Positions 49,230 to 63,608 of a stretch of DNA of 64,000 nucleotides are shown piece by piece. A program made the position numbers and the translations under genes. Every line of letters begins with the position of its first letter. Positions within the stretch are counted from its first letter, which is position 1. Location: positions 62,001-126,000 of the IMG/VR virus record IMGVR_UViG_3300024262_006558. One strand, written 5' to 3'. The notes beneath the pieces were generated by a model, which was not told the DNA's origin, ran no database searches, and saw only the letters and a program-made list of their open reading frames with translations.

Positions 49230-49874
49230 ATGAAAAAGCCAACTATAAACATATATTCAATAACAAGCTCTAATCAAAATTCATGTATATACATAGGAGT
49301 AACTTCTAGGAGTTTAAAAATTAGACTTTCTGAACATATTAGAAATAATACTGGAACATGTTTCAAACAATGGTTGGAGCAAGAAATTAGCCAAGGTCAT
49401 GAAATTTTTATTAACACACTAGATGTTGTATATAAAAAAGAGTCTAAATTTTGGGAAGGGTTTTGGATATGTAACTTTAAATCCTGGGGGTTTACAACCC
49501 TAAATTCAAATATTGGAGGAGGTGGCCCTCTTTATATGACTACACAACAAAAAGAGAAAATGAGTCTTTGTAAGAAGGGTGTGAAAAACCCTTTTTATAA
49601 TAAGAAGCACACAAAAATTTCTAAAGAAAAAATAAGCTGTAACAACTCCAGGTATTGGAAAGGTAGAAAATTAAGACCAGAAATGGTTAGAAAACTTTCT
49701 GAATCCAACTCTATACCAGTGGATCAATTTGATAAATTAGGGAACTTTATAAAGCATTGGAGCTCTATAACAGAGGCTTCAAACATATTGGGTATAGACT
49801 CAAGTTCAATCGTTAAAGTGTTAAAAAACAAAAGAAAAAAAGCAGGAAACTATGGATGGAAATATAAAAAATAG
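49230..49874 (+). CDS. GIY-YIG homing endonuclease with NUMOD3/NUMOD1 domains
   Basis: IYSI...IYIGVT...RL.EH, NPFYNKKHT..SKEKIS, SITEAS..LGI....I..V......AG.Y.WKY. Confidence 0.85.
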   Translation: MKKPTINIYSITSSNQNSCIYIGVTSRSLKIRLSEHIRNNTGTCFKQWLEQEISQGHEIFINTLDVVYKKESKFWEGFWICNFKSWGFTTLNSNIGGGGPLYMTTQQKEKMSLCKKGVKNPFYNKKHTKISKEKISCNNSRYWKGRKLRPEMVRKLSESNSIPVDQFDKLGNFIKHWSSITEASNILGIDSSSIVKVLKNKRKKAGNYGWKYKK

Positions 49875-50607
49875 ATTTGTTATTATCACCCCTTTCTATA
49901 ACCCAGGGGAGTTTTTAGATATTTGTGTTAGAAGCGTCATGACTCAAAAGTATGATGACTTTAAAGTTATTTTCATAGATGATGCGTCTACAGATGACTC
50001 ATGGGACAAGTTGCCACATGAAGATAGTAGAGCAGTTTGCATTCGTAATGAAGAAAATCTTACCGCGCTGGAAAATATCCATAACGCCACCATGAATCAT
50101 TGCGATCCAGATGATATTATTGTATTAGTTGATGGTGATGACTGGTTAAGTTCAAACAAAGTTTTAAATTACCTTAATGATTTTTACAATGAAAATGATT
50201 GCTGGATTTCTTACGGACAAGCCTCTTGGACTAACGGGATGAGAGGTATAGCTAGGCCTATGCCAAAAGAGGTATTTGAAAATATGAGAGAGCACTCTTT
50301 TTACATTTCTCATATAAGAACCTACAGAGCTGGACTGTATCAGAAGATTCAGGAACAAGATGAAAATTTTTCTTGCATGAAAGATAAAGATGGTAAATTC
50401 TATCGATGCACTTACGATGTAGCTATTATGTATCCTATTATGGAAATGGCTGGATATGACAAGACGAAGTATAACGATAAACCTTTGTACATATACAATA
50501 GAGATAATCCAATTTCTGATGATAGAGTTAGACAGGGCATGCAATGGCAAATACATCAAGAAATACTTAAAAAGACAGCCTTTAAAAAGATTGAAAGCTA
50601 TAAATAG
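49852..50607 (+). CDS. Glycosyltransferase family 2
   Basis: IITPFYN, IDDASTD, VDGDDW. Confidence 0.9.
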   Translation: MDGNIKNRFVIITPFYNPGEFLDICVRSVMTQKYDDFKVIFIDDASTDDSWDKLPHEDSRAVCIRNEENLTALENIHNATMNHCDPDDIIVLVDGDDWLSSNKVLNYLNDFYNENDCWISYGQASWTNGMRGIARPMPKEVFENMREHSFYISHIRTYRAGLYQKIQEQDENFSCMKDKDGKFYRCTYDVAIMYPIMEMAGYDKTKYNDKPLYIYNRDNPISDDRVRQGMQWQIHQEILKKTAFKKIESYK

Positions 50608-51056
50608 TGAAAAAGATATTCTACATATCTCAATGCCCGCTACCGCATCCTAACTTAGACCTTGAAAGTGAGGTAGGTGAATTCATTGAAAAATTTATTC
50701 ACCTACCTTTTATTCATCAAACAAATGCGTGGTATGAGAAAAGATTTAATGAAGCTATAGACGCTTTTAATTCCCAGAGAGATAGTATAGGCAACGATCT
50801 ATTTAATACTGGAGGTAAGATGAGATTAAAAAGGGATTCAATATTATGGATCAGGAAAATTGCTCATATAAAAATTAAAATCGACCTTCTTGAAGGTATG
50901 GAAATAAATAATTCAGAATCAACCCCTATATACAATCAAAAGTTTATAGAAAAAAAGATTCTAAAATTAGAAGGGGATTTAAAATTAAACACACTTTTCC
51001 CTTTTCACAATTACGCTAATAGGTTTGATATAGCAAATGGAGGAATGGTAGTATAA
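50607..51056 (+). CDS. Hypothetical protein
   Basis: 149-aa ORF in operon. Confidence 0.55.
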   Translation: MKKIFYISQCPLPHPNLDLESEVGEFIEKFIHLPFIHQTNAWYEKRFNEAIDAFNSQRDSIGNDLFNTGGKMRLKRDSILWIRKIAHIKIKIDLLEGMEINNSESTPIYNQKFIEKKILKLEGDLKLNTLFPFHNYANRFDIANGGMVV

Positions 51057-51058
51057 TT

Positions 51059-51970
51059 ATGGTAAATAACCCGAAAAATATGATAGATGAAATCAATGAT
51101 AACATCTTCGATTATGATTCTGTAAAAAAAGACAGTATAATAATCATTCAAAACCCTGATGAAATTTATGACATCAATGTTATAATTCCAGTGAAAGGTA
51201 GAAGGGAGTTTGCTCTACCTATGTACAACAGCTTTGTGGCAGCTAGGGAAAGTAGCGGTTTAAACATAACATATACAATAGTTGAATTTTCTGATATACC
51301 TGAGCATTCACAATTTTGTAAGAATAATAAAATAAATTATTTATGGATCCCCAGCAAGCCTGGAGACCTGTTTAATAAATGCCTAGCATTCAATATAGGG
51401 GTATTCTTTAGTAATAGAGCAAAGTATATTTTAATGCATGATATAGATTGTTTAATGCAATCTGATTTTTTTGTAAAACTAGAAGAGAATGTATCAGTTA
51501 AGAAATGTAAAGCAATACAATGCTTTACAGGGAGAAGGGTCCTATATTGTAATTCAGAATTGACTTCAAAAATTATAGATGGAAATTTCGACATTGACAA
51601 CCTAAGTATAGATATGCCAGAGGTTGATTACCCTAGGATGGGAGGTCAAATAATGATAGGAGCTCCAGGGGGATCCATCATGATTGATAGGGAATTGTTT
51701 TTTGAAGTTGGAGGTTATGATCCAGAATTATTTCAAGCCAATTCCCCAGAAGACGCATTCTTTTGGGAGAAAGTTAATACTATTTCTAAGATGGAAACAG
51801 CAAATGAGCCAGACATAGAAATATACCATATGTTTCACCCCCCTACATATTATAGCAATCCTAAACTGCAAGACATGCAAGCTATACATCAATACTTCCA
51901 AAGAATGGATACTGATAGTAAAAAAAAAGTGATTGACTATAAATCAGATTTAATAAAAAAATATAAATAA
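51059..51970 (+). CDS. GT-A glycosyltransferase (GT2/GT7C-like)
   Basis: VIIPVKGR, FNK..AFNIG, HDID, VGGYD.......ED..F, H.FHP. Confidence 0.8.
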   Translation: MVNNPKNMIDEINDNIFDYDSVKKDSIIIIQNPDEIYDINVIIPVKGRREFALPMYNSFVAARESSGLNITYTIVEFSDIPEHSQFCKNNKINYLWIPSKPGDLFNKCLAFNIGVFFSNRAKYILMHDIDCLMQSDFFVKLEENVSVKKCKAIQCFTGRRVLYCNSELTSKIIDGNFDIDNLSIDMPEVDYPRMGGQIMIGAPGGSIMIDRELFFEVGGYDPELFQANSPEDAFFWEKVNTISKMETANEPDIEIYHMFHPPTYYSNPKLQDMQAIHQYFQRMDTDSKKKVIDYKSDLIKKYK

Positions 51971-51971
51971 T

Positions 51972-53162
51972 ATGACACCCACCTGGAAAGATGTAATGAA
52001 ATTTGAATTGCCTGATAACCCTATTATTTTTGATATAGGAGGATTTAATGGAGACTGGACCCAAATAGCGTTAGATGAATATACTGCACCAACGATTTAT
52101 GTGTTTGAGCCTGTAAAGCAGTTTTATGAAAAAATCAAAAAAAGATACGCCGATAAAAAAAATGTTAAAGTATTTCATTTTGGATTATCTGACTCCACAA
52201 CATCTTTGGAAATTTCTGTATCTGGAGACGCCTCTTCTGTATTTAAGACAAATGGCGCCTCAGAAACTATACAGCTTAAAAGCATTGTTGAATTCATGAA
52301 GGAAGAGGGGGTTTACCATGTTGATCTTGCTAAGATCAACATAGAAGGGGAAGAATATAGACTCTTAGAGCACTTGGTAAAACTGCCTGAACTAAACATT
52401 TTTAACAATTTTTTAATACAATTTCATAAGTTTGTAGACAATTACGAAGAGAGAAGAAGGCTAATTCAAAAGGAGTTATCTAAATATTATGACATGCCTT
52501 TTAATTTTGAAATGATCTTTGAAGGATGGTCTAATAAAAAGGTTGAATTGATTAATTGTGTAGGAGATAGTCATGTTAGCAATTTTGCTAACACAGAAAA
52601 ATTGACTGATATGAAAGTGCCGTCTATCAATAATATGTTTAAAACTTATAGAGCTGGCCCGTACACTGCTTTTAATGTAAATCAAAAAAGCGATGTTAAA
52701 AACTATATAGAATCTATTAGCGATAAAGAGTCTTTACTTATTTGTTTTGGGGAAATAGACTGCAGAGCGCAAGTGAAAAAGGTAATGGAAAATACCAACA
52801 GGAAATATAGAGAAGTGATAGACGAAATTATAGATAACTATATAGATATAATTCAAAACTTTAAAGGTGACAATGTATATTTATGCTCAATAACCCCATG
52901 CATAGAGGATAAACCTCACTGGTACTACTATGAATCTCACCAGGAAGCCTTTGACTGCCCTAAAGGGACTAAGGAAGAAAGAAATTCATATAAAGAATAT
53001 TTTAATGAAAAATTAAAAAGTATATCTTCAAAAAAAGGATATAAATTCATTAGCATTTTTGACTATGTCAAAGATAGAAAAGATTTTTACCTAGATGATA
53101 TACATCTATCTCCAAAAAAAGTTAATTACTTAATAAGAAGGGAGGTACTAAAATTAGCATAA
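51972..53162 (+). CDS. FkbM-family methyltransferase fused to SGNH-hydrolase-like domain
   Basis: DIGGFNG, FEP, KINIEGEEY; then GDSH, FGEIDCR, DDIHL. Confidence 0.8.
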   Translation: MTPTWKDVMKFELPDNPIIFDIGGFNGDWTQIALDEYTAPTIYVFEPVKQFYEKIKKRYADKKNVKVFHFGLSDSTTSLEISVSGDASSVFKTNGASETIQLKSIVEFMKEEGVYHVDLAKINIEGEEYRLLEHLVKLPELNIFNNFLIQFHKFVDNYEERRRLIQKELSKYYDMPFNFEMIFEGWSNKKVELINCVGDSHVSNFANTEKLTDMKVPSINNMFKTYRAGPYTAFNVNQKSDVKNYIESISDKESLLICFGEIDCRAQVKKVMENTNRKYREVIDEIIDNYIDIIQNFKGDNVYLCSITPCIEDKPHWYYYESHQEAFDCPKGTKEERNSYKEYFNEKLKSISSKKGYKFISIFDYVKDRKDFYLDDIHLSPKKVNYLIRREVLKLA

Positions 53163-53959
53163 TGAAAGACATAATAGTAAAAAGTAATTGGGGCATGAAA
53201 GTTAATCTACAACATGAAAAACAAATATATCTTTTTGTTGATGATTTATCTGGAGCGAACACTCAAGTTGACGGTGTTAAGATTTTGTATTTATGTGAGC
53301 CAAATGAAATTTCAGGATTAGCTCAAAAAGCTATTTTAGAAAGCAGCAAATTTGATTACGTATTAACCCATGAATCAACAGTGTTAGACAGATGTAAAAA
53401 TGCTGTACTGTTTGAATTTGGAGGTTGTTGGATTCAAGGATATGAGTTCCCAGAAAAAGAGTTCTCAGTTTCAACAATCGTAGGTTTTAAGAAAATGGCT
53501 GAAGGTCATCTATTAAGACATAATTTATGGATTAGACAAGATGCTATAACTACTCCTAAAAAGTTCTTTATTAGCGGTAATGATCCTCACCACTTAAGGA
53601 TGCCAGCATTTGGAGAAAACCCAGTATTGGAAGGGGAAAAAACCCCATTGTTTGATAGCATGTTTCATATTGTTATTGAAAACTGTAAGAAAGACAATTG
53701 GTTTACAGAAAAGTTAATAGACACATTACAAACGAAGACATTACCTATTTACTGGGGATGCCCTAATATAGGTAACTGGTTCAATACTGACGGGATGATA
53801 ATAGTTAATAATGTTGACGATCTTATTGAGCAAGTAAATAAATTAACCCCAGAATTATATCAAGAAAAACTTTCTTTTATTGAAAGAAATTACGAAAAAT
53901 CCAAAGAGTTTATTAACTTAAGTGATAGGGTTGCAGATAAATTAAAAGAGATTTTATAA
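53162..53959 (+). CDS. GT10 (alpha-1,3-fucosyltransferase-like) protein
   Basis: FHIVIEN....WFTEKL.D......PIYWG.PNI. Confidence 0.75.
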   Translation: MKDIIVKSNWGMKVNLQHEKQIYLFVDDLSGANTQVDGVKILYLCEPNEISGLAQKAILESSKFDYVLTHESTVLDRCKNAVLFEFGGCWIQGYEFPEKEFSVSTIVGFKKMAEGHLLRHNLWIRQDAITTPKKFFISGNDPHHLRMPAFGENPVLEGEKTPLFDSMFHIVIENCKKDNWFTEKLIDTLQTKTLPIYWGCPNIGNWFNTDGMIIVNNVDDLIEQVNKLTPELYQEKLSFIERNYEKSKEFINLSDRVADKLKEIL

Positions 53960-54032
53960 TGAGGGTCATAGGAAACTATTTTTTCACCATTCTAGAAAAA
54001 GGGGAAGTTTGAAACTTTAAAATATATTGAAA

Positions 54033-54824
54033 ATGTATAAAAATATTGTCACATCTCAACTTGCTGGAGGCCTTGGCAACTATTTATTTCAAATAGCTGC
54101 AGCATACTCTTATGCTCTAAAGCATGGCAAAAAGCCAGTTTTTAACACTAATTTATCCATAAAAGTTCACAGGGGAATAGAATGTTATTTTGACAACATA
54201 CTTCGATCGATAGAGAAGAAAGATACGGTAGCAACTCAGACCACAATTGGTGAACAAGGATTTCAATTTACAGAATTGCCTTTTGTTGCAAATGGAGTAG
54301 CTTTAACTGGATATTTTCAATCTGAAAAATACTTTAAGGAATACGAAAAAGAGATTAAAGATCTCTTTTCCTGCCCTGATCACATAAAAGAATCTATAAA
54401 CAAAAGATTCCCTAGTATGGATAGTGTGGAATCATGTTCTATACATGTCCGCAGAGGTGACTATGTAAAACTGCAAGATATACACCCAGTTCAGAGCATG
54501 CCTTACTTTATGAAAGCTTTAAATAAGATGCCAAAAGATTGTAGCATATTTGTTTTTTCTGATGATATAGAGTGGTGTAAAAATTCTTTCCCAGATATGG
54601 GGGAAAGAATTCATTTCGTAGAAGGATATTCCGATGTAGAAGATTTGTATTTAATGTCAATGTGTGATCATAACATTATTTCAAATAGCACTTTTTCATG
54701 GTGGGCTGCCTGGTTAAATGATAATCCTAAAAAAATAGTAGTGGCTCCAAAGAAATGGTTTGGGCCAATGAACTCTCATTTAGATACAAAGGATATTTAT
54801 CCAGAAAAATGGGAGAAAATATAA
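54033..54824 (+). CDS. GT11 alpha-1,2-fucosyl/colitosyl-transferase
   Basis: GGLGNYLFQ, GYFQSEKYF, HVRRGDY, FSDDI.WC, NSTFSWW.AWL. Confidence 0.92.
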   Translation: MYKNIVTSQLAGGLGNYLFQIAAAYSYALKHGKKPVFNTNLSIKVHRGIECYFDNILRSIEKKDTVATQTTIGEQGFQFTELPFVANGVALTGYFQSEKYFKEYEKEIKDLFSCPDHIKESINKRFPSMDSVESCSIHVRRGDYVKLQDIHPVQSMPYFMKALNKMPKDCSIFVFSDDIEWCKNSFPDMGERIHFVEGYSDVEDLYLMSMCDHNIISNSTFSWWAAWLNDNPKKIVVAPKKWFGPMNSHLDTKDIYPEKWEKI

Positions 54825-54967: not shown

Positions 54968-55348
54968 GTGAAATTTATGAGAAAACTCTTCTACGTAAAT
55001 AATAGTGGATATAAAACGTCTCTTAATCAAACTCTCAGGCAAGCTGAAGAATCTGCCACAATTAATTACATAAGGGAGAAGTGCAGCGTTTTTATAGCTC
55101 AAATGATTGAATTAAATATAGAGTCGACATTTGGCCCAATGGAATTGCATAACTTTAATATAAGGTGTAGCAAATTTTTTAAGACTATTAATGTCCATGA
55201 TTTTGGTGTAGTATATGATGAGTCTATTTGGATGCCTCAAGACATACCAAGAAATATGTTAAGGGTAACAGTTCAATTAAGCAGTTATTTACATGCATAT
55301 GAGATGGACTTCTCTATATCTAATATTAAGAAAAAATACAATTTATGA
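54968..55348 (+). CDS. Hypothetical protein resembling the tail sheath C-terminal domain
   Basis: NQTLRQ...F.VVYDE......IPRNML...VQL parallels sheath GQKTLQR...FNVVMDD......IDRNTL...IQL. Confidence 0.45.
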   Translation: MKFMRKLFYVNNSGYKTSLNQTLRQAEESATINYIREKCSVFIAQMIELNIESTFGPMELHNFNIRCSKFFKTINVHDFGVVYDESIWMPQDIPRNMLRVTVQLSSYLHAYEMDFSISNIKKKYNL

Positions 55349-56277: not shown

Positions 56278-56389
56278 AGTTTAGATATTCATAAAGATGA
56301 TCCTGCTATAGTTTGACAGGTATTGCATTTTAAACTCAAAAATGATACCTTTACCTTTTGACTCTGAATAATAACTTTAATATATCTAT

Positions 56390-56701: not shown

Positions 56702-56738
56702 TGTTAAGTATATGAGTAGGATTTTAAACGATTAAGTA

Positions 56739-56876: not shown

Positions 56877-57051
56877 GTTTAAAATATTACGCATATACCT
56901 TGTTGTGAAGCGTTTTATGGGCGAGATGTTTACTTTTGAGTGCCACCATAAAAAATGCGATGGTAGGTGCTCTTACTTAGGTGATGATAGGCAGACAGGA
57001 GTTTGGATTAGCTTATATGAATGCAATAAGTGCGGAACTGAATGGATGTAA
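56851..57051 (+). CDS. Cassette Cys-rich protein (reads through site)
   Basis: ILRIYLVVKR is encoded by the arm and GTT; C-terminal CxxC. Confidence 0.55.
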   Translation: MIKISRKSKFKILRIYLVVKRFMGEMFTFECHHKKCDGRCSYLGDDRQTGVWISLYECNKCGTEWM

Positions 57052-57073
57052 TGCTTTACAATAATATATATAT

Positions 57074-57382
57074 ATGACATTTGAAGAAATAGAAACAAAC
57101 CCTGATCTTTCAAACAATTCAGAGCAGGAATATGTTAGACTTAAAAAAAGAAACGTAATGATCAGAAAGTCATTCTACCATAGCTACAATAAATCGGTCT
57201 GCGAGTATGATGTAAACGGTCATCCTACCAAATGCGAATGTGGATGCGAGGATTTCGATCAAGATATCATAGAAATGGTCGAAGGTCATATTCATGAATA
57301 TGACCTTACATGCTCAAATGAAGGCTGTAGAAAAATAGTTGGATACTGGTCTTATGGATCTTGGCAGTCTTTAGAATTGTAA
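57074..57382 (+). CDS. Hypothetical Zn-binding protein
   Basis: CECG...C...C...GYWSYG.W. Confidence 0.65.
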   Translation: MTFEEIETNPDLSNNSEQEYVRLKKRNVMIRKSFYHSYNKSVCEYDVNGHPTKCECGCEDFDQDIIEMVEGHIHEYDLTCSNEGCRKIVGYWSYGSWQSLEL

Positions 57383-57395
57383 TAAAACACATATA

Positions 57396-57635
57396 ATGAA
57401 AAAATTTATAGACATAGAATTGCCTAAAAATTTTATGAACGTATCTATTACCGATAACAACGAATTAGTAGCGGATAACAATAGTAGTTCGGAATGGGAT
57501 ACTTTAAAATTCCCATTGCCAAAAAGGGTGTGGGGAGTGTATAGCTATGAAGCTACCGTAGATAATCAAAACGCTAAATCTATTGCTAGACTAGTTGATT
57601 GTCGAGGTTGGATAAGAAGGTTCTTAGAGGTTTAA
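57396..57635 (+). CDS. Hypothetical protein
   Basis: 79-aa ORF. Confidence 0.6.
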   Translation: MKKFIDIELPKNFMNVSITDNNELVADNNSSSEWDTLKFPLPKRVWGVYSYEATVDNQNAKSIARLVDCRGWIRRFLEV

Positions 57636-57645
57636 TTATAGAATT

Positions 57646-57825
57646 ATGGATATAAAAGAAATAAAAAAAGAAGAGGTAAGTGAAATATATGACTTTTTAG
57701 AGGGGCTGCAAGATTACGGACACATTTACCACTACCCGCCCGAAAATCTTGACGAACCTTTCAAAAAGATAATGGAAGGAATTGAAGAGGTGCAGGGATT
57801 GATGAAAGATAGCTTTGGGATGTAA
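57646..57825 (+). CDS. 59-aa hypothetical protein
   Basis: Hand translation MDIKEIKKEEVSEIYDFLEG...KDSFGM. Confidence 0.55.
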   Translation: MDIKEIKKEEVSEIYDFLEGLQDYGHIYHYPPENLDEPFKKIMEGIEEVQGLMKDSFGM

Positions 57826-58183
57826 TCTTATTTACATGCTGTTAATAAAACTAGGGCAACGTTTAACGTTTTCTAGTAGATTATAATATGCACTCTACCA
57901 TGTGCCCGACATCGGCAACATGGTTTTATGTTGAATTAAATAGGGGTGGGATTAAATGAACGTCTGCACTAGTCGAGTTGAAAATATACTTGCAAGTTGG
58001 TACTAAAGCCAACTATCCTAGCCAACGGGCTTTGCGGTTCACCCTATTTAATGTAACGCTTTGTGTATGGTTAGTAAACCCTTGCACAGACTTTCAAAAT
58101 TAGTATAAACCTTGGTGGGTTTATTACCTACAATGTTAAATGTATGCTTTGCTAGAGATTACGGACAGATAACCACTAAAACA

Positions 58184-58489
58184 ATGGACTTAAAAAAGAG
58201 AATAGAAGAAATTACACAAAACGGAACGCTTGAAAGCGGTGAACAAATAACCTATGTAGATACCGATGACCTTTACTTGTTGCTGAATGAAGTAAACTCT
58301 AGTGAAGTCATACATCTTGTTAGCGATTGGAATGATTGGGTATATGGATCACCTACATCAATAATAGATGGGAGTCATATTGAAGTTATGTGGTCTGACA
58401 ACTCAGTCACTAAAGTTTTTTATGAATGGAGAAGTAAATCTATGGCACATAAGTTACCACCAATAAAGTGGAGGTATTCTAATAGCTAA
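58184..58489 (+). CDS. Cassette hypothetical protein (first 45 codons lie within the hairpin)
   Basis: MDLKKRIEE...SSEVIHLVSDW. GTT at 58319; the TAA overlaps the closing TAAC. Confidence 0.65.
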   Translation: MDLKKRIEEITQNGTLESGEQITYVDTDDLYLLLNEVNSSEVIHLVSDWNDWVYGSPTSIIDGSHIEVMWSDNSVTKVFYEWRSKSMAHKLPPIKWRYSNS

Positions 58490-58581
58490 CGGTTTGGCTA
58501 TGTGCTGAACGTAGAGCAACGGAGTTTTGCATATAGCTAGTGTTATATGCTTTTAATTATTAACAACTAAAGATTATAAAA

Positions 58582-58932
58582 ATGAGTGAAACAGTACATT
58601 ACAGAGGGATTGCTACTAAAATTGAGCAACCAAACGACAAGACATTAATTGATGTCGCAAAAAGTATTTTAACAGAACGTAACAAAGAAATAGCCGACTA
58701 TTATGACAATGTAATAGAGTGTTTGTGTGATAGCTATTATAGAGAATTTTTCTACCATTCAAAAACACAGACCCTTTACAAATTAGACAATAATGAATAC
58801 GAGCCTGATGAAGATATAATAAGAGCAGAACCGAAAGAAAACGGGACTATTGAATATGAGTTAAGATATTATAACGGTGGTGCTGGATTTGATGAATGTA
58901 TGGAAGAGGCTTTTGATAAGCTCGATGCTTAA
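58582..58932 (+). CDS. Cassette hypothetical protein
   Basis: MSETVHYRG...YYNGGAGFDE; bounded by gttatatgc/gcatataac. Confidence 0.75.
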   Translation: MSETVHYRGIATKIEQPNDKTLIDVAKSILTERNKEIADYYDNVIECLCDSYYREFFYHSKTQTLYKLDNNEYEPDEDIIRAEPKENGTIEYELRYYNGGAGFDECMEEAFDKLDA

Positions 58933-59036
58933 TTGCATATAACGGCATCCTGTATGATGTCGTGAAACGAAGTGGAATGCATTCATACACCGTGTTGTGT
59001 GTAGTGCGGATTATTAACTGATAACAAAATTAAAAG

Positions 59037-59216
59037 ATGAATGTATTTGATGAATTTTTAATGGAATCTGAAAAGGAACAATTAAAAGACAACCGACTGA
59101 AAGAACAGAAAGATAAAAAAGACTACTCGTATGAACACGATGGTAGAATAGAAACATGTGACGATTGTAGAACACCTATAAACTCACACGGACACTGCCC
59201 TAGATGCGATTACTAG
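59037..59216 (+). CDS. 59-aa cassette protein with CxxC...CxxC zinc finger
   Basis: Hand translation ends TCDDCRTPINSHGHCPRCDY. Confidence 0.65.
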   Translation: MNVFDEFLMESEKEQLKDNRLKEQKDKKDYSYEHDGRIETCDDCRTPINSHGHCPRCDY

Positions 59217-59267
59217 CATTACACACAACGGATGGTAATATGAATAGTGCGGATTAAAAACATAAAA

Positions 59268-59435
59268 ATGGCAAAGACACGAGAACAAAAAAGAATTGAA
59301 AGTGCGGATAAAGTTTGTAGAGAACTTAGATACCAAATAGTTAAATATGGATTGATAGGTGATTGGGACGCATTAAATAAGCACTTTAATTCTTGGATGA
59401 ATAACGCTAAGAAATCTAAATACGACAGACCCTAG
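59268..59435 (+). CDS. 55-aa protein inside a hairpin loop
   Basis: MAKTREQKR..., between arms gtaatatgaatagtgc and gcattatttatattac. Confidence 0.6.
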   Translation: MAKTREQKRIESADKVCRELRYQIVKYGLIGDWDALNKHFNSWMNNAKKSKYDRP

Positions 59436-59514
59436 CATTATTTATATTACGTGTTGTGCGCACGTTTTAATTGCGACACAACGCTAAGTATAACAAACGG
59501 AAAATTTACGACTT

Positions 59515-59673
59515 ATGAGATTTGAATTAATGCAATGGAAATGGTATAGGAAGTGGAAAGGTGGCTCTTATTACCTTATATGGAATTGGCTACCTATGAA
59601 CACTTTTTGGAGCGACAAACTTATTACAAGCTGTGGAGGCAGAGCCATTAAAGAGGAACACTACCCTAAGTAA
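59515..59673 (+). CDS. 52-aa Trp-rich peptide inside a hairpin loop
   Basis: MRFELMQWKWYRKWKGGSYYLIWNWLPMNTFWSDKLITSCGGRAIKEEHYPK. Confidence 0.6.
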   Translation: MRFELMQWKWYRKWKGGSYYLIWNWLPMNTFWSDKLITSCGGRAIKEEHYPK

Positions 59674-59791
59674 ATTTTATGTTTTGTTATACAATGTTGT
59701 ATGGCAAAGCGTACCGTTTTAATGGCATACAACGGTTGAGTATAAACGTAGTGTTTAACTGAACTTAATTTGAAACACAAAACTTAAAATT

Positions 59792-59992
59792 ATGATAAAA
59801 AGATTGATTGAAAAACTGAAAACATTACGTTTATACTTTGTTAGAAAACGTTGTTTTGAGGTGTATTTCACAGATACCAAAAGTGGAAAGGAAGGAAGAA
59901 TTAATTTATGGGTGAAAGATGTCGATGAAGTAGAACCTTACTTTGAAAAACACTTTCCACATTTGGAATTATATGATATAGGAGAATGTTGA
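59792..59992 (+). CDS. Cassette hypothetical protein (reads through site)
   Basis: TLRLYFVRKR is encoded by the arm and the GTT at 59840. Confidence 0.65.
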   Translation: MIKRLIEKLKTLRLYFVRKRCFEVYFTDTKSGKEGRINLWVKDVDEVEPYFEKHFPHLELYDIGEC

Positions 59993-60102
59993 TTACAATG
60001 TTTTCTAACGACCTGTGTAAAATTTCGTGTGAGGCACGAGCAATGAATTTTAAACCTTGTTAGCGTTTCGTTTTTGAGCGTTGGCATTTAAAAACTAAAA
60101 AG

Positions 60103-60264
60103 ATGAAAGTAAGTATTCAGTTCACAAAAGAAGAATTAAGATTATTAAAAAAGGCGTTATTTTTTGGAATAACACATAATGAAAACAACCAAGAAGCAAA
60201 TAAAATGAATGAATTAGATGCGAAAATGAATTTACTGTGTGCGTTGGCAGAAAATGAACGCTAA
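60103..60264 (+). CDS. 53-aa cassette protein
   Basis: MKVSIQFTKEELRLLKKALFFG...; the TAA overlaps the TAAC of the terminal site. Confidence 0.6.
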   Translation: MKVSIQFTKEELRLLKKALFFGITHNENNQEANKMNELDAKMNLLCALAENER

Positions 60265-60322: not shown

Positions 60323-60394
60323 AACGCGCTTTTAGCTACATAATTTTTATTGATTATATTCAAAAATTTGTTTATGTTTTGAATAAAATCATAA

Positions 60395-61594
60395 ATGACG
60401 GAAGTAAAGATACCCTTAGTAAAAGACACTATATCACATGAGGATATGGATGCTCTTGCGGATTGGATTAAAACCTACCCTCGCCTTACGAAAGGCCCAG
60501 AAACAAATGAATTTGAAAAAGAGTGGTCTGAATGGCTAGGTACAAAGTATTCCGTATTTTGTAACTCTGGATCTTCAGCAAACCTTCTTATGCTTTACGC
60601 TCTTATCGTAGCGAAAAGACTTAACAATAAAAAAATAGTGGTACCAGCATTAGCTTGGGCTACGGATCTTGCTCCAGTAATGCAATTGGGTCTTGAGCCA
60701 ATTATATGCGATTGTAATGGTCAAAATCTCGCTGTAGACCTAAATGATTTAGAACGTATTTTCCAGAAAGACAACCCTTCAGCCCTTATGCTGGTATCGG
60801 TTCTTGGTATCCCTCCAAATATGGATGAGATAATTGTTCTTTGTAAAAAGTATGGAGTTATCCTTTTAGAGGATGCTTGTGAATCACTAGGTTCTGAATA
60901 CAAAGGCAATAAACTCGGAACTTTCGGATCCATGTCAACATTCTCACTATATTTCGGACACCATCTTTCAACTATTGAAGGTGGTATGGTATGCACTGAT
61001 GATGAAGAGCTTTATGAAATATTGAAATCTATTCGTTCTCATGGTTGGGACAGAGATGCTTCAGAAGAGTATCGTAAAAAGTGGAGAGATAAATGGGATG
61101 TGGATGATTTTAACGGCCTTTACACTTTCTACCACCCTGGATTCAATTTAAGAGCTACAGATTTACAAGCATTTATAGGTAGAAGGCAAATTAAAAAAGC
61201 TGATGAAGTTTCTAAAATCAGAGCTGCTAATTTTCAGAAATATCAAGAATTGATATCCGATCATTCTGCATGGAAACCTGAACCGCCAGAAGGCGCTTTT
61301 GTTTCCAATTTTTGTTACCCTGTACTGCACGCAAAGAGAAAAGAGATAGTAACAGATCTAATCGCTAATGGCGTTGAAACTAGACCTATGATATGTGGAT
61401 CTATGAGTACTCAACCATTTTATGTGGACAAATACGGCAGAAAAGAATTATACACCGCAAAGCAAATAGATGATTACGGATTCTACGTGCCTAATAATGA
61501 TAAAATGACTGATGAGGACATTCAAACCGTATGCAACATAATCAATAAGCATACTGTAAACCCTGAAGTAGAACCGCAAGAAAACAATCAATAA
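60395..61594 (+). CDS. DegT/DnrJ-fold PLP enzyme, ColD-like GDP-4-keto-6-deoxymannose 3-dehydratase
   Basis: [29 protein letters not shown] (His at the usual Lys position), RSHGW. Confidence 0.8.
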
Positions 61595-61595
61595 A

Positions 61596-63608
61596 ATGAA
61601 AGAAGATAAAAAGAAAGCTCTCATTATAGGTATCACTGGAATGGATGGGTCTCACTTGTCTGAATTACTTTTAGATAAAGGATATGAAGTTCACGGGGTT
61701 ATTAGAAGACATTCTCATATAGGGGGAACTGGACGAATTGATCACATATTCGATGAATTGAAACTTCATTATGGAGACGTTACTGACGCTTTAAATATAT
61801 CTAGGTTAATTTCCGAAATACAACCCGATGAAATTTACAACCTATCAGCTCAGAGCCATGTAAAAGTTTCTTTTGAAGAACCTGGATATACAGCTCAAGT
61901 AGATGCAATTGGAACATTAAACGTAATGGAATCAGCTAGAATCCATTGTCCTAATGCGAAGATTTACCAAGCATCAACCTCTGAGATGTTTGGAGGTTTA
62001 GCTTACAATAGACCTGAAAATGGTTATACTGAAGAATCTCCATTTCACCCGCGATCACCTTATGGTGTCGCTAAGGTGTACGGTTTTTGGATAGTAAAAA
62101 ACTATAGAGAAGCATACAATATGCATGCTTCCAACGGTATATTATTCAATCATGAAGGTGAAAGACGTGGAGTAACTTTTGTTACTAGAAAAGTGACCAG
62201 AGCATTGGCGGCCATTAAGAAGGGTGAGCAAGATGTTTTGACTCTCGGTAACATGGATTCCTTAAGAGACTGGGGATATGCTAAAGAGTATTGTATAAAT
62301 TTAGATGTACCTATTTTGACAACTAGTGGATGGAAATTTTATGATGAAATTTCTGAAGGTGATCAAATAATTAATTTTAATTCTGAAGAAAATCACATAA
62401 CTACAGATACAGTTAAAAGCAAAATAGTAATTAAATCAAATGGTGAAAAAATTAAATTAACAGGCAGAGGAGTTTGTATAAACGTAACTCCAGATCATCG
62501 GATTTACTATCAGAAAAAAAGTAAAAAATCAAAAGGTGGATGGTCAAAATACAAAATTTGTACAGCTAAAGAATTTTATGATTTATTAAAAAATAAAGCG
62601 TACAGAACAAAGTATGACTATAGGCTGCCGCATTTTCAAGATTATGACAAAAAAGAAAATGAAAAATACTCAGATAACGAACTTTATTTAATAGGGGCTT
62701 TATTGGCGGAAGGTTGTCTATCTAATTCAAATCCTGGGAGAGGGTCTATAGTTTCCTTATCTCAATCTTTTATTAAAAATGAAAAAATTCACAAAAAATT
62801 ACAAAAAATAATAGATGATGAAAAACTTGAAGCTAGGTTATGCAATAAAAACAATGGTGTAACTGAATGGGTCTTTACAGCAGATAGTTCTAAAAAAATT
62901 ATTGAATATTTTGATGGATTTGATGTGCATGTGATGCCTAAAGATTTCTATAATTTAAGCAGTAGGCAATGTAAAATTGTATTTGACTCTTTAATGGATT
63001 GCGATGGATGTTGGGGATCATACACATACACTTCTAAACGTAATTTACTAGCATCTGATTTCCAAACTATAGCTCATCTTGCAGGATATAGAACTACGGG
63101 CGTAAAATTTGTAAATAACGTTTACATAACTAGTGTTATAACACGATCCAAAAAACATATGTATATACAAAATGTGGAATCATATAATGATAACAATGAT
63201 AAAGTTTGGTGTGTGAATAGCAATAATGGAACTATCATAACTAGAGATCAAAACTGCATTAATATAGTAGGTAATTGTGAAGGAATGTGGAGAATGTTGC
63301 AACAAGACACTCCTGATGACTATGTACTGGCAACTAACGAAACTCATACAGTAAGACAATTTGTAGAAGAAGCAGTTAGGTATTGCGGATGGGATATCGA
63401 GTGGAGAGGTGAGGGCGTAGATGAAAAAGGTTATGATAAGTCAACTGGTAAACTTCTCATCGAAATTAACCCTAAATATTATAGACCATCTGAAGTTGAT
63501 CTATTGTTAGGGGACGCTACCAAAGCAAAGGAGAAGATGGGTTGGGAACCTAAAACTAAATTTAAAGATCTAGTCAAATTAATGATGGAGCATGATCTGA
63601 AAGCTTAA
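61596..63608 (+). CDS. gmd: GDP-mannose 4,6-dehydratase interrupted by an intein
   Basis: GITG.DGS.L, AQSHV..SF, QASTSE, PRSPYG.AK, LFNHE..RRG.TFVTRK, RDWG.A; resumes after the insert with WRMLQQD.PDDYV. Confidence 0.95.
62292..63275 (+). mobile_element. Intein with LAGLIDADG homing endonuclease (328 aa)
   Basis: Starts [12 protein letters not shown]; block B VTPDH; LIGALLAEG and FDSLMDCDG; ends VWCV...NG....R.....IVGN followed by Cys+1. Confidence 0.92.

What the first reader, a model, noticed from the sequence alone, without database searches (positions are those of the whole stretch)
49852..63608. Phage-encoded GDP-colitose (or fucose) pathway with matching transferases
Seen: Gmd, an Fcl/ColC-type reductase, and a PLP enzyme with [14 protein letters not shown] (His instead of the Schiff-base Lys), plus GT11, GT10-like and two GT-A enzymes. 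Established: Gmd + ColD + ColC make GDP-L-colitose; ColD has this His; GT11 enzymes transfer fucose or colitose in alpha-1,2 linkage. Inference: the phage builds a fucose/colitose glycan on its virion (the fibre proteins are very S/T-rich) or on the host surface.
Basis: partly seen in the sequence, partly recalled or inferred. Interest (0 to 1): 0.65.

Follow-up and report, generated by a model that had tools for sequence, protein, structure and literature searches.

The report
Huge-phage colitose/fucose glycan island, intein-split Gmd

Summary
Window 49852-63608 (+ strand) encodes Gmd, a DegT-family enzyme with His in place of the Schiff-base Lys, one Fcl/ColC-family reductase, a GT11, a GT10-family enzyme and two GT-A enzymes.

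Corrections and additions:
- The 670-aa Gmd ORF holds a 328-aa intein with a LAGLIDADG endonuclease (62292-63275). Gmd needs protein splicing.
- The island is in two blocks, split by about 4 kb of small variable ORFs.
- It also has an FkbM methyltransferase/SGNH-like protein and a GIY-YIG endonuclease.

The His enzyme is ColD-type. It scores best against solved ColD, keeps ColD's Arg219 and Arg331, lacks the E1/SpnQ Fe-S cysteine motif, and abuts Gmd. The genome record has no other 4,6-dehydratase and no sugar nucleotidyltransferase.

The reductase cannot be assigned to Fcl or ColC by sequence. Colitose is 3-deoxy-L-fucose, so one enzyme could plausibly make both sugars.

No island protein has a predicted membrane segment, and the record holds no flippase-, polymerase- or ligase-like protein. 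The acceptor (virion proteins or host envelope precursors) is unresolved.

The island is syntenic in related huge phages. A Gmd / Fcl-like / His-DegT / GT11 module also occurs in cyanophage ACG-2014f, annotated "aminotransferase". Verdict: new variant of a known kind, moderate interest.

The parts
49230..49874 (+). GIY-YIG / NUMOD homing-endonuclease-like gene at the upstream edge of the island; its end overlaps the GT2 start
   Evidence: PF01541, PF07460 and PF07453 hits. Relatives carry free-standing GIY-YIG or LAGLIDADG genes elsewhere in the same island.
49852..50607 (+). GT-A glycosyltransferase, family 2 (251 aa), no predicted membrane segment
   Evidence: PF00535 E 8.4e-18, 65.3 bits. 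It is the only PF00535 hit in the 388-kb record. No hydrophobic segment.
50607..51056 (+). 149-aa protein of unknown function
   Evidence: No Pfam, NCBIfam or PHROG hit. The atlas search gave nothing usable.
51059..51970 (+). Second GT-A-type glycosyltransferase (303 aa)
   Evidence: PF10111 Glyco_tranf_2_2, 28.9 bits against a cut-off of 27.3. A PF10111-marked gene lies at the upstream edge of the island on the 91% relative's contig.
51972..53162 (+). FkbM-type methyltransferase (N-terminal half) fused to an SGNH/GDSL-like domain (C-terminal half): candidate glycan O-methylation and O-acyl tailoring
   Evidence: TIGR01444 58 bits against a cut-off of 37.7; PF05050. Weak PF13472 hit; GDSH and DDIH motifs seen in the translation. 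Relatives carry sulfotransferases or TylF/CmcI methyltransferases in the island instead.
53162..53959 (+). GT10-family (alpha-1,3/4-fucosyltransferase-like) GT-B enzyme, 265 aa
   Evidence: PF00852 at 21.2 bits (below cut-off) for this protein, but 9 of 9 homologues hit it, best E 9.8e-10. AlphaFold model pLDDT 89.8; top PDB fold match is H. pylori alpha-1,3-fucosyltransferase 2nzx, E 2.2e-6. An IEN...FTEK motif is present.
54027..54824 (+). GT11 alpha-1,2-fucosyl/colitosyl-transferase (the start is probably the ATG at 54033)
   Evidence: PF01531 E 8.5e-34. 31% identity, E 7e-42, to the GT11 of the E. coli O55 O-antigen cluster. I take that gene to be WbgN, the colitosyltransferase characterised in the literature. 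HVRRGDY motif. The JGI gene call is 263 aa.
54968..55348 (+). 126-aa protein of unknown function, conserved just upstream of the reductase in relatives
   Evidence: No family hit. An equally sized, unannotated gene stands in the same position on the 91% relative's contig (127 aa); the 123-aa gene calls are this same gene on other assemblies. The atlas gave only weak structural look-alikes.
55345..56277 (+). Fcl/ColC-family extended SDR (310 aa): GDP-4-keto-6-deoxy-sugar epimerase/4-reductase. It is the only reductase of this kind in the record
   Evidence: PF01370 E 8.5e-47. NF047922 Fcl at 201 bits, below the 500 cut-off. Human GDP-fucose synthase 218 bits, E. coli Fcl 130 bits. ColC of O55: 32% identity, 145 bits. 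S-x-C, Y-x3-K and His174 are kept. Only two PF01370 proteins exist in the record.
56390..60264 (+). Variable spacer of about 14 small ORFs (45-125 aa) with no annotation. It splits the island into two blocks and probably does not belong to the pathway
   Evidence: ORF list. No Pfam hits for the four tested. The 91% relative has only three small genes here. No tRNA, Rfam family or enriched promoter signal.
60395..61594 (+). ColD-type PMP-dependent GDP-4-keto-6-deoxy-D-mannose 3-dehydratase (399 aa); catalytic His189 is the codon at 60959-60961
   Evidence: PF01041 E 8.4e-71. PDB: ColD 203 bits, E1 141, perosamine synthase 117. 34% identity to ColD of E. coli O55. His189, Arg220 and Arg330 match ColD His188, Arg219 and Arg331. 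It lacks the C-X57-C-X-C-X8-9-C motif seen in E1-like sequences.
61596..62291 (+). Gmd N-extein (residues 1-232)
   Evidence: PF16363 profile positions 1-229, E 1.7e-91. The catalytic ASTSE and Y-x3-K motifs are kept.
62292..63275 (+). Intein (328 aa) with a LAGLIDADG homing endonuclease, inserted in Gmd between ...AKEY and C+1
   Evidence: The exteins abut seamlessly in the Gmd profile. 77 protein clusters of Gmd carry a homologous insert. Cys1, T/S-x-x-His, terminal Gly-Asn and Cys+1 are invariant in all 61 aligned proteins; the LAGLIDADG Glu and Asp are each kept in 60 of 61. Model pLDDT 94.6; top fold matches are the Tli/Pho VMA inteins (TM 0.70, E 1e-14), PI-SceI and PI-PfuI. The 91% relative's Gmd is 340 aa with no insert.
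63276..63608 (+). Gmd C-extein (110 aa plus stop). It starts with Cys where intein-free Gmds have Val
   Evidence: PF16363 profile positions 230-332, E 1.3e-35. All ten intein-free Gmds aligned have Val at that position.

Best explanation
This is a conserved glycan-building island of a huge, uncultured contractile-tailed phage. The IMG/VR record is 388.6 kb, cut from a 494-kb contig of a subsurface metagenome.

Proposed pathway:
1. The phage has no sugar nucleotidyltransferase, so it draws on the host's GDP-mannose.
2. The Gmd precursor first excises its intein by protein splicing. This is inferred from fully conserved splice residues.
3. Spliced Gmd makes GDP-4-keto-6-deoxy-D-mannose.
4. The adjacent ColD-type enzyme uses PMP and a catalytic His in place of Lys. 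It removes the 3-hydroxyl to give GDP-4-keto-3,6-dideoxy-D-mannose, without an Fe-S cluster or a partner reductase.
5. The single Fcl/ColC-family SDR then epimerises and reduces at C-4. From the ColD product this gives GDP-L-colitose, which is 3-deoxy-L-fucose. From the Gmd product it gives GDP-L-fucose. Which sugar dominates depends on flux.
6. A GT11, a GT10-family enzyme and two GT-A enzymes assemble the oligosaccharide. A weak, below-cut-off GT1/GT4-like gene just past the window may add to it. An FkbM methyltransferase/SGNH-like protein tailors it.

No island protein has a predicted membrane segment, and the record encodes no initiating phosphoglycosyltransferase-, flippase-, polymerase- or ligase-like membrane protein. 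Assembly must therefore be cytoplasmic.

I favour the phage's own structural proteins as acceptor, by a small margin, over host lipid-linked envelope precursors.

Shown: gene identities, active-site features, the intein, synteny, and the absence of export genes. Inferred: substrates, products, splicing, acceptor.

My own odds: ColD-type 3-dehydratase activity 0.75; GDP-colitose among the products 0.6; virion acceptor 0.45; host-envelope acceptor 0.35; other acceptor 0.2.
For: - Gene identities and scores.
- ColD-type features: His189 aligns with ColD His188, and the H188N mutant chain 3b8x differs at exactly that aligned position. Arg220 and Arg330 align with ColD Arg219 and Arg331. The window protein has Arg and Ala at two of the Fe-S cysteine columns and gaps at the others, while three E1-like viral proteins in the same alignment keep the full motif. 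The review PMC8987622 names His-for-Lys and absence of the 2Fe-2S motif as what separates ColD from aminotransferases and from E1/SpnQ.
- Linkage: the ColD stop codon is one base from the Gmd start.
- Genome content: the whole 388-kb record has only two PF01370 SDRs (Gmd and the reductase), one DegT protein and no NTP_transferase.
- Synteny: GT10 / GT11 / reductase / ColD-like / Gmd stand in the same order in the relatives where Gmd lies on the fetched piece. The tailoring enzymes between them are swapped.
- Wider distribution: 16 of 23 distinct phage loci with a His-type DegT also hold a Gmd, and most hold an Fcl-like gene next to it.
- Donor promiscuity: the GT11 enzymes WbgN and FUT2 accept both GDP-Col and GDP-Fuc, so the donor pool decides which sugar is installed (PMC11987014).
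- Intein.
- Cytoplasmic assembly: no island protein has a predicted membrane segment, and no polytopic Wzx/Wzy-like ORF occurs in 388 kb.
Against: - No biochemical or expression data exist for any of these proteins.
- The maximum-likelihood tree leaves E. coli ColD, the E1-like group, the cyanophage group and the window's group as an unresolved polytomy inside the His clade. Orthology to ColD is not shown.
- Identity to ColD is only 34%.
- The reductase scores far below NCBIfam's Fcl cut-off (201 against 500). It is equidistant from ColC and E. coli Fcl, and sits in its own clade. No ColC structure or diagnostic residue is available. The His179-equivalent that I tried as a marker varies freely within the clade.
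- The intein has Gly, not His, before the terminal Asn, and both Pfam intein hits are below their cut-offs. Splicing is inferred from conservation only.
- WbgN-type GT11 enzymes natively act on lipid-linked glycans. The cyanophage literature assumes host-surface modification.
- The record is a cut contig. About 105 kb of the 494-kb contig were not searchable.
Confidence: 0.6

Rival explanations
1. Same sugar chemistry, different acceptor. The soluble transferases act at the inner face of the host membrane on host undecaprenyl-linked O-antigen, capsule or glycoprotein precursors. The host's own flippase and ligase then export the altered glycan. This remodels the infected cell's surface, for example to block superinfection or adsorption of progeny.
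For: - GT11 enzymes of O-antigen clusters such as WbgN act on glycolipid acceptors.
- Cyanophage papers read similar gene sets as LPS or cell-wall modification genes.
- Lack of phage export genes is expected if the host machinery is used.
Against: - There is no initiating transferase and no sign of lysogeny functions in the island.
- Five or six transferases plus tailoring enzymes would have to fit a host acceptor and be tolerated by the host flippase and ligase.
- The tailoring enzymes differ between close relatives.
- Nothing tests this rival directly either.
Confidence: 0.3
2. Fucose only. Gmd plus the Fcl-like reductase make GDP-L-fucose for the GT10 and GT11 enzymes. The His-type DegT protein is not a GDP-sugar 3-dehydratase in vivo. 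It could be inactive, work on another substrate, or act as a slow transaminase.
For: - The reductase's best solved relatives are genuine GDP-fucose synthases, and it keeps every Fcl catalytic residue.
- Phage Gmd + Fcl + fucosyltransferase sets without mention of a dehydratase are described in the literature.
- Orthology of the DegT protein to ColD is unresolved in the tree.
Against: - The DegT gene is conserved at 60-91% identity across relatives, with the His-His motif intact, and it stays linked to the reductase.
- It abuts Gmd.
- The ColD-specific Arg residues are kept.
- In the cyanophage-type loci, Gmd, Fcl-like, His-DegT and (in several of them) a GT11 lie back to back.
Confidence: 0.15
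3. The His-type DegT is an E1/SpnQ-like dehydratase that acts on a host-supplied CDP- or dTDP-4-keto-6-deoxyhexose. The product would be a different dideoxy sugar, such as abequose, tyvelose or paratose.
For: - NCBIfam's best hit is the RfbH (E1) model at 217 bits.
- JGI labels several homologues CDP-6-deoxy-D-xylo-4-hexulose-3-dehydrase.
- E1-like genes do occur in phage contigs.
Against: - The RfbH score is about half the model's cut-off of 423.
- The protein lacks three of the four Fe-S cysteines that the E1-like viral proteins keep.
- Solved ColD outscores solved E1 by 62 bits.
- The record has no E3-like partner, no cytidylyltransferase and no CDP-glucose dehydratase.
Confidence: 0.04
4. 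The transferases glycosylate the phage's DNA (hypermodified bases) rather than protein or lipid acceptors.
For: Phage glycosyltransferases that hang diverse glycans on hydroxymethyl-pyrimidines are known.
Against: - The record's only thymidylate-synthase-family gene is a true ThyA, at 260 bits to E. coli ThyA.
- There is no Tet/JBP hit, although the control genomes were also silent for that family.
- That paper does not mention fucose or GDP.
- GT10 and GT11 families are known for glycan acceptors.
Confidence: 0.03

Closest known systems
GDP-L-colitose pathway of E. coli O55/O111 (Gmd, ColD/WbdK, ColC/WbdJ) with the GT11 colitosyltransferase WbgN
   Same: - The same three enzyme families and a GT11.
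- His replaces the Schiff-base Lys; there is no Fe-S motif; Arg219 and Arg331 equivalents are kept.
- The GT11 is 31% identical to the O55 cluster's GT11.
   Different: - Identity is only 34% to ColD and 32% to ColC, and orthology is unresolved in the trees.
- There is no ManB/ManC, no Wzx/Wzy and no initiating transferase.
- The cluster is viral, Gmd carries an intein, and extra GT10, methyltransferase and SGNH-like genes are present.
Cyanophage 'LPS / cell-wall modification' auxiliary gene clusters (S-SCSM1 gmd, fcl and fucosyltransferases; ACG-2014f gp223-gp226)
   Same: - Phage-borne Gmd, Fcl-like reductase, GT11 and other transferases, with methyl- and sulfotransferases.
- ACG-2014f gp225 has the same His-His motif.
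   Different: - The window's ColD-like and reductase proteins belong to separate clades, about 36% and 32% identical to the cyanophage ones.
- Gene order differs.
- The cyanophage gene is annotated only as 'aminotransferase'. I found no paper that reads it as a dehydratase.
Glycan machinery of giant viruses (chlorovirus PBCV-1 Gmd/GMER and multi-domain transferase-methyltransferases; mimivirus fibril sugars)
   Same: Virus-encoded nucleotide-sugar tailoring, soluble transferases and a methyltransferase that build a virion glycan in the host cytoplasm. This is from my own knowledge and from the title and abstract of review PMC9614988 listed, which I did not read.
   Different: Those viruses have eukaryotic hosts. 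To my knowledge no 3-dehydratase or dideoxyhexose has been reported there. No sequence relationship was tested here.
Virion glycosylation of mycobacteriophages (Freeman et al. 2023, as cited in PMC12619734)
   Same: Phage-encoded soluble glycosyltransferases that decorate capsid and tail proteins.
   Different: Those phages carry one to a few transferases and no sugar-nucleotide pathway. The acceptor in the present phage is untested.
Full-size inteins with LAGLIDADG endonuclease (PI-SceI, PI-PfuI, Tli/Pho VMA inteins)
   Same: - Fold match with TM 0.70.
- Cys1, a T-x-x-H block, terminal Asn, Cys+1 and two LAGLIDADG motifs with their acidic residues.
   Different: - The host protein is Gmd.
- The penultimate residue is Gly in all 61 family members, instead of the usual His.
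- Pfam intein models score below their cut-offs.
- The 2015 intein survey lists only a UDP-glucose/GDP-mannose dehydrogenase intein, not a Gmd intein.

Membership tests
ColD (GDP-4-keto-6-deoxy-D-mannose 3-dehydratase) | Fold-type I aminotransferase-like DegT family protein | tested here: met
   PF01041 E 8.4e-71 over residues 16-383.
ColD (GDP-4-keto-6-deoxy-D-mannose 3-dehydratase) | Histidine in place of the Schiff-base lysine (ColD His188) | tested here: met
   His189 aligns with ColD His188. Lys-type DegT proteins in the same alignment have Lys there. The feature is defined in PMC8987622.
ColD (GDP-4-keto-6-deoxy-D-mannose 3-dehydratase) | No 2Fe-2S cysteine motif (this separates ColD from E1 and SpnQ) | tested here: met
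   Only the first Cys column is kept. Arg220 and Ala222 stand where E1-like proteins have Cys, and there are gaps at the rest.
ColD (GDP-4-keto-6-deoxy-D-mannose 3-dehydratase) | Arg219 and Arg331, which I recall as ligands of the GDP phosphates (from memory of the ColD structures, not checked in a paper here) | tested here: met
   Arg220 and Arg330 are conserved, as in 21 of 22 and 20 of 22 ColD-like sequences. E1-like proteins have Cys at the first position.
ColD (GDP-4-keto-6-deoxy-D-mannose 3-dehydratase) | Forms one clade with characterised ColD, apart from E1-like proteins | tested here: inconclusive
   The His clade is monophyletic (100/100), but ColD, the E1-like group and the two phage groups form a polytomy. 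ColD sits on a long branch of 1.59.
ColD (GDP-4-keto-6-deoxy-D-mannose 3-dehydratase) | Converts GDP-4-keto-6-deoxymannose to the 3,6-dideoxy-4-keto product, with PMP regenerated from glutamate | not testable with these tools
   Needs an enzyme assay.
GDP-L-fucose synthase (Fcl/GMER) or GDP-L-colitose synthase (ColC) | Extended SDR with a Ser-x-Cys and Tyr-x3-Lys catalytic set | tested here: met
   LSTCIYPD and YGYAKR motifs; PF01370 E 8.5e-47.
GDP-L-fucose synthase (Fcl/GMER) or GDP-L-colitose synthase (ColC) | Reaches NCBIfam's equivalog cut-off for Fcl (NF047922) | tested here: not met
   201.2 bits against a cut-off of 500. It is filed as family-level only, not as an Fcl equivalog.
GDP-L-fucose synthase (Fcl/GMER) or GDP-L-colitose synthase (ColC) | Groups with ColC rather than with Fcl, or the reverse | tested here: inconclusive
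   145 bits to ColC and 144 bits to E. coli Fcl. It forms its own clade with other huge-phage proteins. The His179-equivalent is present here but varies within the clade (H 51, Y 29, F 28, N 6), and an E. coli O84 Fcl has Asn there. It is not diagnostic.
Gmd (GDP-mannose 4,6-dehydratase) | Reaches the TIGR01472 equivalog cut-off and keeps the catalytic Thr/Glu and Tyr-x3-Lys | tested here: met
   463.6 bits against 415. ASTSE and SPYGVAK motifs align with E. coli Gmd.
Gmd (GDP-mannose 4,6-dehydratase) | Uninterrupted polypeptide | tested here: not met
   A 328-aa insert lies between profile positions 229 and 230. The enzyme can only form after protein splicing.
Class 1 intein with LAGLIDADG homing endonuclease | Cys/Ser at position 1, T-x-x-H block, C-terminal Asn, Cys/Ser/Thr at +1 | tested here: met
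   All four are present and invariant in 61 homologous Gmd inserts.
Class 1 intein with LAGLIDADG homing endonuclease | Penultimate His before the terminal Asn | tested here: not met
   Gly in 61 of 61. Inteins without this His are known (my knowledge), so this lowers confidence but does not exclude splicing.
Class 1 intein with LAGLIDADG homing endonuclease | HINT fold with an inserted LAGLIDADG domain | tested here: met
   Model pLDDT 94.6. Fold matches: Tli/Pho VMA inteins at TM 0.70, E 1e-14; PI-SceI; PI-PfuI; I-DmoI for the endonuclease part. Pfam PF14890 (E 0.0083) and PF14528 (E 0.15) are below their cut-offs.
GT11 (alpha-1,2-fucosyl/colitosyl-transferases) | Pfam PF01531 over the cut-off, and the HxRRGD donor motif | tested here: met
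   117.6 bits against 23.9. HVRRGDY motif. 31% identity to the O55 cluster's GT11.
GT10 (alpha-1,3/4-fucosyltransferases) | Pfam PF00852 over the cut-off | tested here: not met
   21.2 bits against 23.9 for the window's protein alone. All 9 homologues hit the family at E <= 0.01, best E 9.8e-10.
GT10 (alpha-1,3/4-fucosyltransferases) | GT-B fold closest to solved GT10 enzymes | tested here: met
   The top Foldseek matches are H. pylori FucT (2nzx, 2nzw). FUT9 and plant FUT11 are also listed, but other GT-B enzymes score close behind.
Wzx/Wzy-type O-antigen or capsule gene cluster | Initiating phosphoglycosyltransferase, flippase, polymerase or ligase (polytopic membrane proteins) | tested here: not met
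   No island protein has a hydrophobic segment. No ORF in 388 kb looks like a 10-12-helix transporter. This rests on a crude hydropathy scan, not a family search.

The most novel reading that the evidence does not exclude
Phages encode a complete route to a 3,6-dideoxyhexose (GDP-L-colitose). As far as I could find, this would be the first virus-encoded dideoxy-sugar pathway. The module has gone unrecognised ('aminotransferase') in cultured cyanophages and is widespread in huge phages. There it builds a strain-variable, methylated or sulfated colitose/fucose glycan on the virion itself. In a sizeable subset, the pathway's first enzyme is gated by a previously uncatalogued Gmd intein family that lacks the penultimate His.
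Probability: 0.35. Interest if true: 0.7.

Novelty: new variant of a known kind. Interest (0 to 1): 0.5.

Why it matters
Phage-borne Gmd, Fcl and fucosyltransferase genes are already described, and are usually filed as host LPS-modifying auxiliary genes.

What is added here:
- A ColD-type 3-dehydratase belongs to these modules. The predicted product therefore shifts from common fucose to the rare bacterial antigen sugar colitose.
- The same call applies to cultured, tractable cyanophages such as ACG-2014f. The prediction can be tested on real virions and infected cells.

If confirmed, it would extend virus-made glycans to dideoxyhexoses. It would also give a handle on an old open question, namely what the 'LPS genes' of marine phages are for. 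And it would correct a recurrent annotation error.

The Gmd intein family covers 77 protein clusters. Its splice residues are invariant, and Gly stands where most inteins have His. That makes it a ready set for studying splicing without the penultimate His, and intein homing in phage metabolic genes.

Tried and rejected
- Megablast of the ColD-Gmd stretch against GenBank phages: no match.
- His179 of Fcl as a marker for Fcl against ColC. It looked promising: ColC of O55 has Tyr, and the ColD-linked phage reductases have N, K, G, D or F. I rejected it because the residue varies freely inside the window's own clade, and an annotated E. coli O84 Fcl has Asn.
- Trees of the DegT and reductase families did not resolve orthology to ColD or ColC.
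- A perosamine-synthase reference from E. coli O157 was sought through a gmd hit, but that hit was serogroup O84. I used Lys-type DegT proteins from phage loci as outgroup, and the PDB scores, instead.
- The two small unknown proteins (149 and 126 aa) gave nothing in Pfam, NCBIfam, PHROGs or the protein atlas.
- Promoter and terminator scans showed no excess over shuffles. No tRNA and no Rfam family was found in the window.
- The DNA-glycosylation reading was checked and set aside.
- The rest of the 494-kb JGI contig could not be searched as a record. Only 8.5 kb past the cut were seen, through a gene look-up.
- Bacterial species genomes gave only about 36% identical ColD-like genes, from many phyla, so there is no host clue. 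That scan finds close relatives only.
- Reads: only assembled contigs were available. They confirm the stretch in its probable source sample, and show pieces of an intein-bearing relative in a soil run. They cannot show expression or splicing.
- The large profile search and the complex predictor were not used. No claim here rests on absence of relatives or on binding.
- Procedural note: a local script concatenated the two Gmd extein translations as a phmmer query, to label Gmd genes in fetched loci. No outside tool received that joined sequence. From then on, the exteins were used separately and by reference.

Full report
**Setting.** The window is bases 62001-126000 of a 388,594-bp IMG/VR virus record. 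That record is the first part of a 494,080-bp JGI contig, Ga0210003_1000004. The source is labelled a subsurface metagenome. GC content is 34%. Upstream, on the minus strand, lie large S/T/G/N-rich fibre-like ORFs, a tail sheath (28077-30458) and a T4-like major head protein (37639-39297). The capsid protein's nearest cultured relatives are Flavobacterium and Microcystis myoviruses and the 'huge phages' of the LR7565xx series, at 34-46% identity. This is a huge contractile-tailed phage with an unknown host.

| Coordinates | Gene | Key evidence |
|---|---|---|
| 49852-50607 | GT2 | 65.3 bits |
| 51059-51970 | second GT-A | 28.9 bits, cut-off 27.3 |
| 53162-53959 | GT10-like | see below |
| 54027-54824 | GT11 | E 8.5e-34 |
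| 55345-56277 | Fcl/ColC-family SDR | PF01370 E 8.5e-47 |
| 60395-61594 | DegT-family enzyme | quoted motif at residues 184-197 |
| 61596-63608 | Gmd | TIGR01472 463.6 bits, cut-off 415 |

The GT10-like call is below Pfam's threshold for this protein alone (21.2 against 23.9 bits). All nine aligned homologues hit PF00852, with a best E of 9.8e-10. A confident model (pLDDT 89.8) has H. pylori alpha-1,3-fucosyltransferase as its top fold match.

One is an FkbM methyltransferase whose C-terminal half looks SGNH-like, with GDSH and DDIH motifs (51972-53162). The second is a GIY-YIG endonuclease at the upstream edge (49230-49874). The third is that about 4 kb of small unannotated ORFs (56390-60264) split the island into two blocks.

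**The intein.** Gmd is 670 aa where relatives have about 340. Residues 1-232 match Gmd profile positions 1-229 and residues 561-670 match positions 230-332, so a 328-aa insert sits exactly between them. The closest relative's Gmd (its ColD-like protein is 91% identical to the window's) is 340 aa with no insert.

A word search restricted to the insert found 77 protein clusters, all of them Gmd proteins, most about 650-700 aa, with a homologous insert at 37-64% identity. In 61 aligned members, these are invariant:
- Cys1;
- the His of a T/S-x-x-H block;
- the terminal Gly-Asn;
- Cys+1.

The acidic residues of the two LAGLIDADG motifs are each kept in 60 of 61. All ten intein-free Gmds aligned have Val at the +1 position.

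The model (pLDDT 94.6) matches endonuclease-bearing VMA inteins (TM 0.70, E 1e-14), PI-SceI and PI-PfuI. This is therefore a full-size intein under purifying selection, and the phage's Gmd can only exist after splicing. The family-wide Gly in place of the usual penultimate His is unusual. The sub-threshold Pfam scores explain why it is not annotated.

Contigs from a soil run hold pieces of a related intein-bearing allele, differing at a few percent of positions.

**Is the His enzyme ColD?** The review PMC8987622 gives the defining features of sugar 3-dehydratases. They have His in place of the aminotransferase Lys. E1 and SpnQ also have a four-cysteine 2Fe-2S motif and need a partner reductase. 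ColD has neither.

What I found for the window's protein:
- Its best solved match is ColD (203 bits), ahead of E1 (141) and perosamine synthase (117).
- It is 34% identical to ColD from the O55 cluster, which I fetched from E. coli CB9615.
- His189 aligns with His188. The H188N mutant chain in the PDB differs at exactly that aligned position.
- Three E1-like proteins from phage contigs in the same alignment keep the motif C-X57-C-X-C-X8-9-C. The window's protein, E. coli ColD and all other ColD-like phage proteins keep only the first Cys and have Arg (ColD Arg219) at the second. Arg331 is kept too.
- The gene's stop is one base from the Gmd start.
- The whole record contains only two PF01370 SDRs, one DegT protein and no sugar nucleotidyltransferase. 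The only 4-keto-6-deoxy sugar the phage itself can make is the GDP-linked one.

One caveat remains. The tree puts all His-type proteins in one clade against the Lys-type outgroup. Inside it, E. coli ColD, the E1-like group, the cyanophage group and the window's group are left unresolved. I therefore file the protein as ColD-type by function-defining features, not as a proven orthologue.

**Fucose or colitose?** The reductase keeps the Ser-x-Cys, Tyr-x3-Lys and His residues of Fcl. Its best solved match is human GDP-fucose synthase at 218 bits. It scores far below NCBIfam's Fcl cut-off. It is as far from E. coli ColC (32%, 145 bits) as from E. coli Fcl (29%, 144 bits).

I tested whether loss of the His179-equivalent marks ColC-type enzymes. 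It does not. Within the window's own clade the position is H, Y, F or N, and an annotated E. coli Fcl has Asn.

What does hold is linkage. Every member of this reductase clade for which I could see flanking DNA also has a ColD-like gene a few kilobases away.

Colitose is 3-deoxy-L-fucose. One enzyme doing C-5 epimerisation and C-4 reduction with Fcl's stereochemistry would give colitose from the ColD product and fucose from the Gmd product. GT11 enzymes (WbgN, FUT2) accept either donor, so the donor pool decides what is installed (PMC11987014). My estimate is that GDP-colitose is among the products (0.6), possibly alongside GDP-fucose.

**Distribution.** The window's ColD-like protein has metagenomic relatives at 60-91% identity. 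The best matches in bacterial species genomes are about 36%, from many phyla.

Related huge-phage contigs show the same island order: GT2, GT10, tailoring enzymes, GT11, reductase, small ORFs or homing endonucleases, ColD-like, Gmd, a 'DNA transfer'/phosphoesterase protein, and a GT1-like gene. The tailoring slot is filled differently in each:
- FkbM/SGNH-like protein in this window;
- two sulfotransferases in the 91% relative;
- TylF and CmcI methyltransferases in others.

One relative's fetched piece (L041) lacks a Gmd gene, and another (L027) ends before the place where it would stand.

A second, distinct module, Gmd / Fcl-like / His-DegT / GT11 lying back to back, occurs in many viral contigs and in Synechococcus phage ACG-2014f. 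There the DegT gene is annotated 'aminotransferase' and carries the same His-His motif. In all, 16 of 23 distinct phage loci with a His-type DegT also hold a Gmd.

Phage Gmd + Fcl + fucosyltransferase sets are described for cyanophage S-SCSM1 (PMC9602691). I found no paper that links colitose or a 3-dehydratase to a phage or virus genome.

**Where does the glycan go?** No island protein has a hydrophobic segment. No ORF in the 388-kb record resembles a flippase, polymerase, ligase or polyprenyl-phosphate transferase. Assembly is therefore cytoplasmic, on an acceptor the phage does not export by itself. That fits decoration of phage structural proteins before assembly, with precedents in mycobacteriophages and giant viruses. 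It also fits modification of host lipid-linked precursors that the host then exports, which is the usual reading of cyanophage 'LPS genes'.

Swapping of tailoring enzymes between close relatives points to a surface-exposed, diversifying structure, but it does not tell the two readings apart. I lean to the virion (0.45 against 0.35) because of the all-soluble, initiator-free, multi-transferase make-up in a phage with no sign of lysogeny in the island. This is inference only.

S/T-rich fibres are not evidence. DNA glycosylation is unlikely: the only thymidylate-synthase-family gene is a true ThyA, and no Tet/JBP-like gene was found.

**Verdict.** The system is a new variant of a known kind, namely virus-encoded glycan synthesis. 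It is notable for three things:
- the ColD-type step, which predicts a dideoxyhexose;
- its unrecognised spread into cultured cyanophages;
- the intein that gates the first enzyme.

**Procedural notes.** The single read-laying run used 4,701 letters. In one search a local script joined the two Gmd exteins for labelling only. All later searches used the exteins separately, by reference, and the joined form went to no outside tool.

Noticed in passing
G000:C1 about 378,050-383,090 (L085:2050-7089, minus strand), outside the window: Phage-borne CRISPR-Cas genes: Cas6, a 327-aa protein, a Cas7fv-like protein and a 740-aa Cas3 HD-helicase. This looks like a type I-F-variant system. A GmrSD_N-domain protein lies about 3 kb away.
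   Followed up: no
JGI contig Ga0210003_1000004, positions 388,595-397,109 (first 8.5 kb of L087): The IMG/VR 'provirus' cut at 388,594 does not look like a phage-host junction. The contig runs on to 494,080 bp. The next 8.5 kb encode a Peptidase_S74 fibre-chaperone protein, PspA, an R2K-domain protein, a ligand-gated ion-channel-like protein and small ORFs. The phage genome may be about 494 kb.
   Followed up: partly
L029:8971-10164 (Synechococcus phage ACG-2014f gp225, NC_026927.1 162882-164075): This gene is annotated 'aminotransferase', but it has the His-His dehydratase motif and lacks the Fe-S cysteines. It sits between an Fcl-like gene and a GT11-like 'glycosyltransferase', downstream of a Gmd. 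The annotation probably needs correcting to a ColD-type 3-dehydratase.
   Followed up: partly
L022:8167-9498, L024:17927-19219, L030:15556-16857 (LR756502.1): E1/RfbH-like His-type dehydratases (430-443 aa) with the full C-X57-C-X-C-X8-9-C Fe-S motif also occur in phage contigs and in a 642-kb huge phage, beside a ColD-like gene. Some phages may carry both GDP- and CDP-type dideoxy-sugar routes.
   Followed up: no
window 51972-53162: The FkbM methyltransferase is fused to a C-terminal SGNH/GDSL-like half with GDSH and DDIH motifs. This could be an O-acyl esterase or transferase for the glycan. Pfam support is weak (E 0.0026).
   Followed up: partly
window 56390-60264: A variable spacer of about 14 small ORFs lies between the reductase and ColD. 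Several have paired Cys motifs (for example 56851-57051, 57074-57382 and 59037-59216), which suggests zinc ribbons. The closest relative has only three small genes here. Relatives carry homing endonucleases in this interval.
   Followed up: no
window 63679-64000 and on (L002:180-1751): The ORF after Gmd is a 523-aa PHROG 1745 'DNA transfer protein' with a metallophosphoesterase hit (E 4e-153). It is conserved after Gmd in relatives and marks the downstream end of the sugar genes.
   Followed up: partly
L002:2668-3036 (G000 128,167-128,535): A 122-aa protein (PHROG 2428). The equally sized gene at the same position on the closest relative's contig carried a weak Acb2/Tad1-hairpin Pfam mark, so it may be an anti-defence sponge.
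   Followed up: no
L002:3198-4475 (G000 128,697-129,974): A GT1/GT4-like glycosyltransferase (PF00534 at 25.9 bits, just under the 26.4 cut-off) lies about 3 kb past the window. It is conserved at this position in relatives and may be a further transferase of the same system.
   Followed up: partly
window 46389-47138: A PhoH-like ATPase (E 8e-66) lies just upstream of the island, on the same strand.
   Followed up: no
window 36272-36886: A 204-aa ORF with four hydrophobic segments lies inside the structural region. It is one of very few membrane-protein candidates in the record.
   Followed up: no
P0261, P0285, P0294 (Gmd proteins of 1049-1066 aa from metagenomes): Some Gmd genes appear to carry two inteins. 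Two of the three bear extra PF14890 and PF14528 marks, and one bears PF05204.
   Followed up: no
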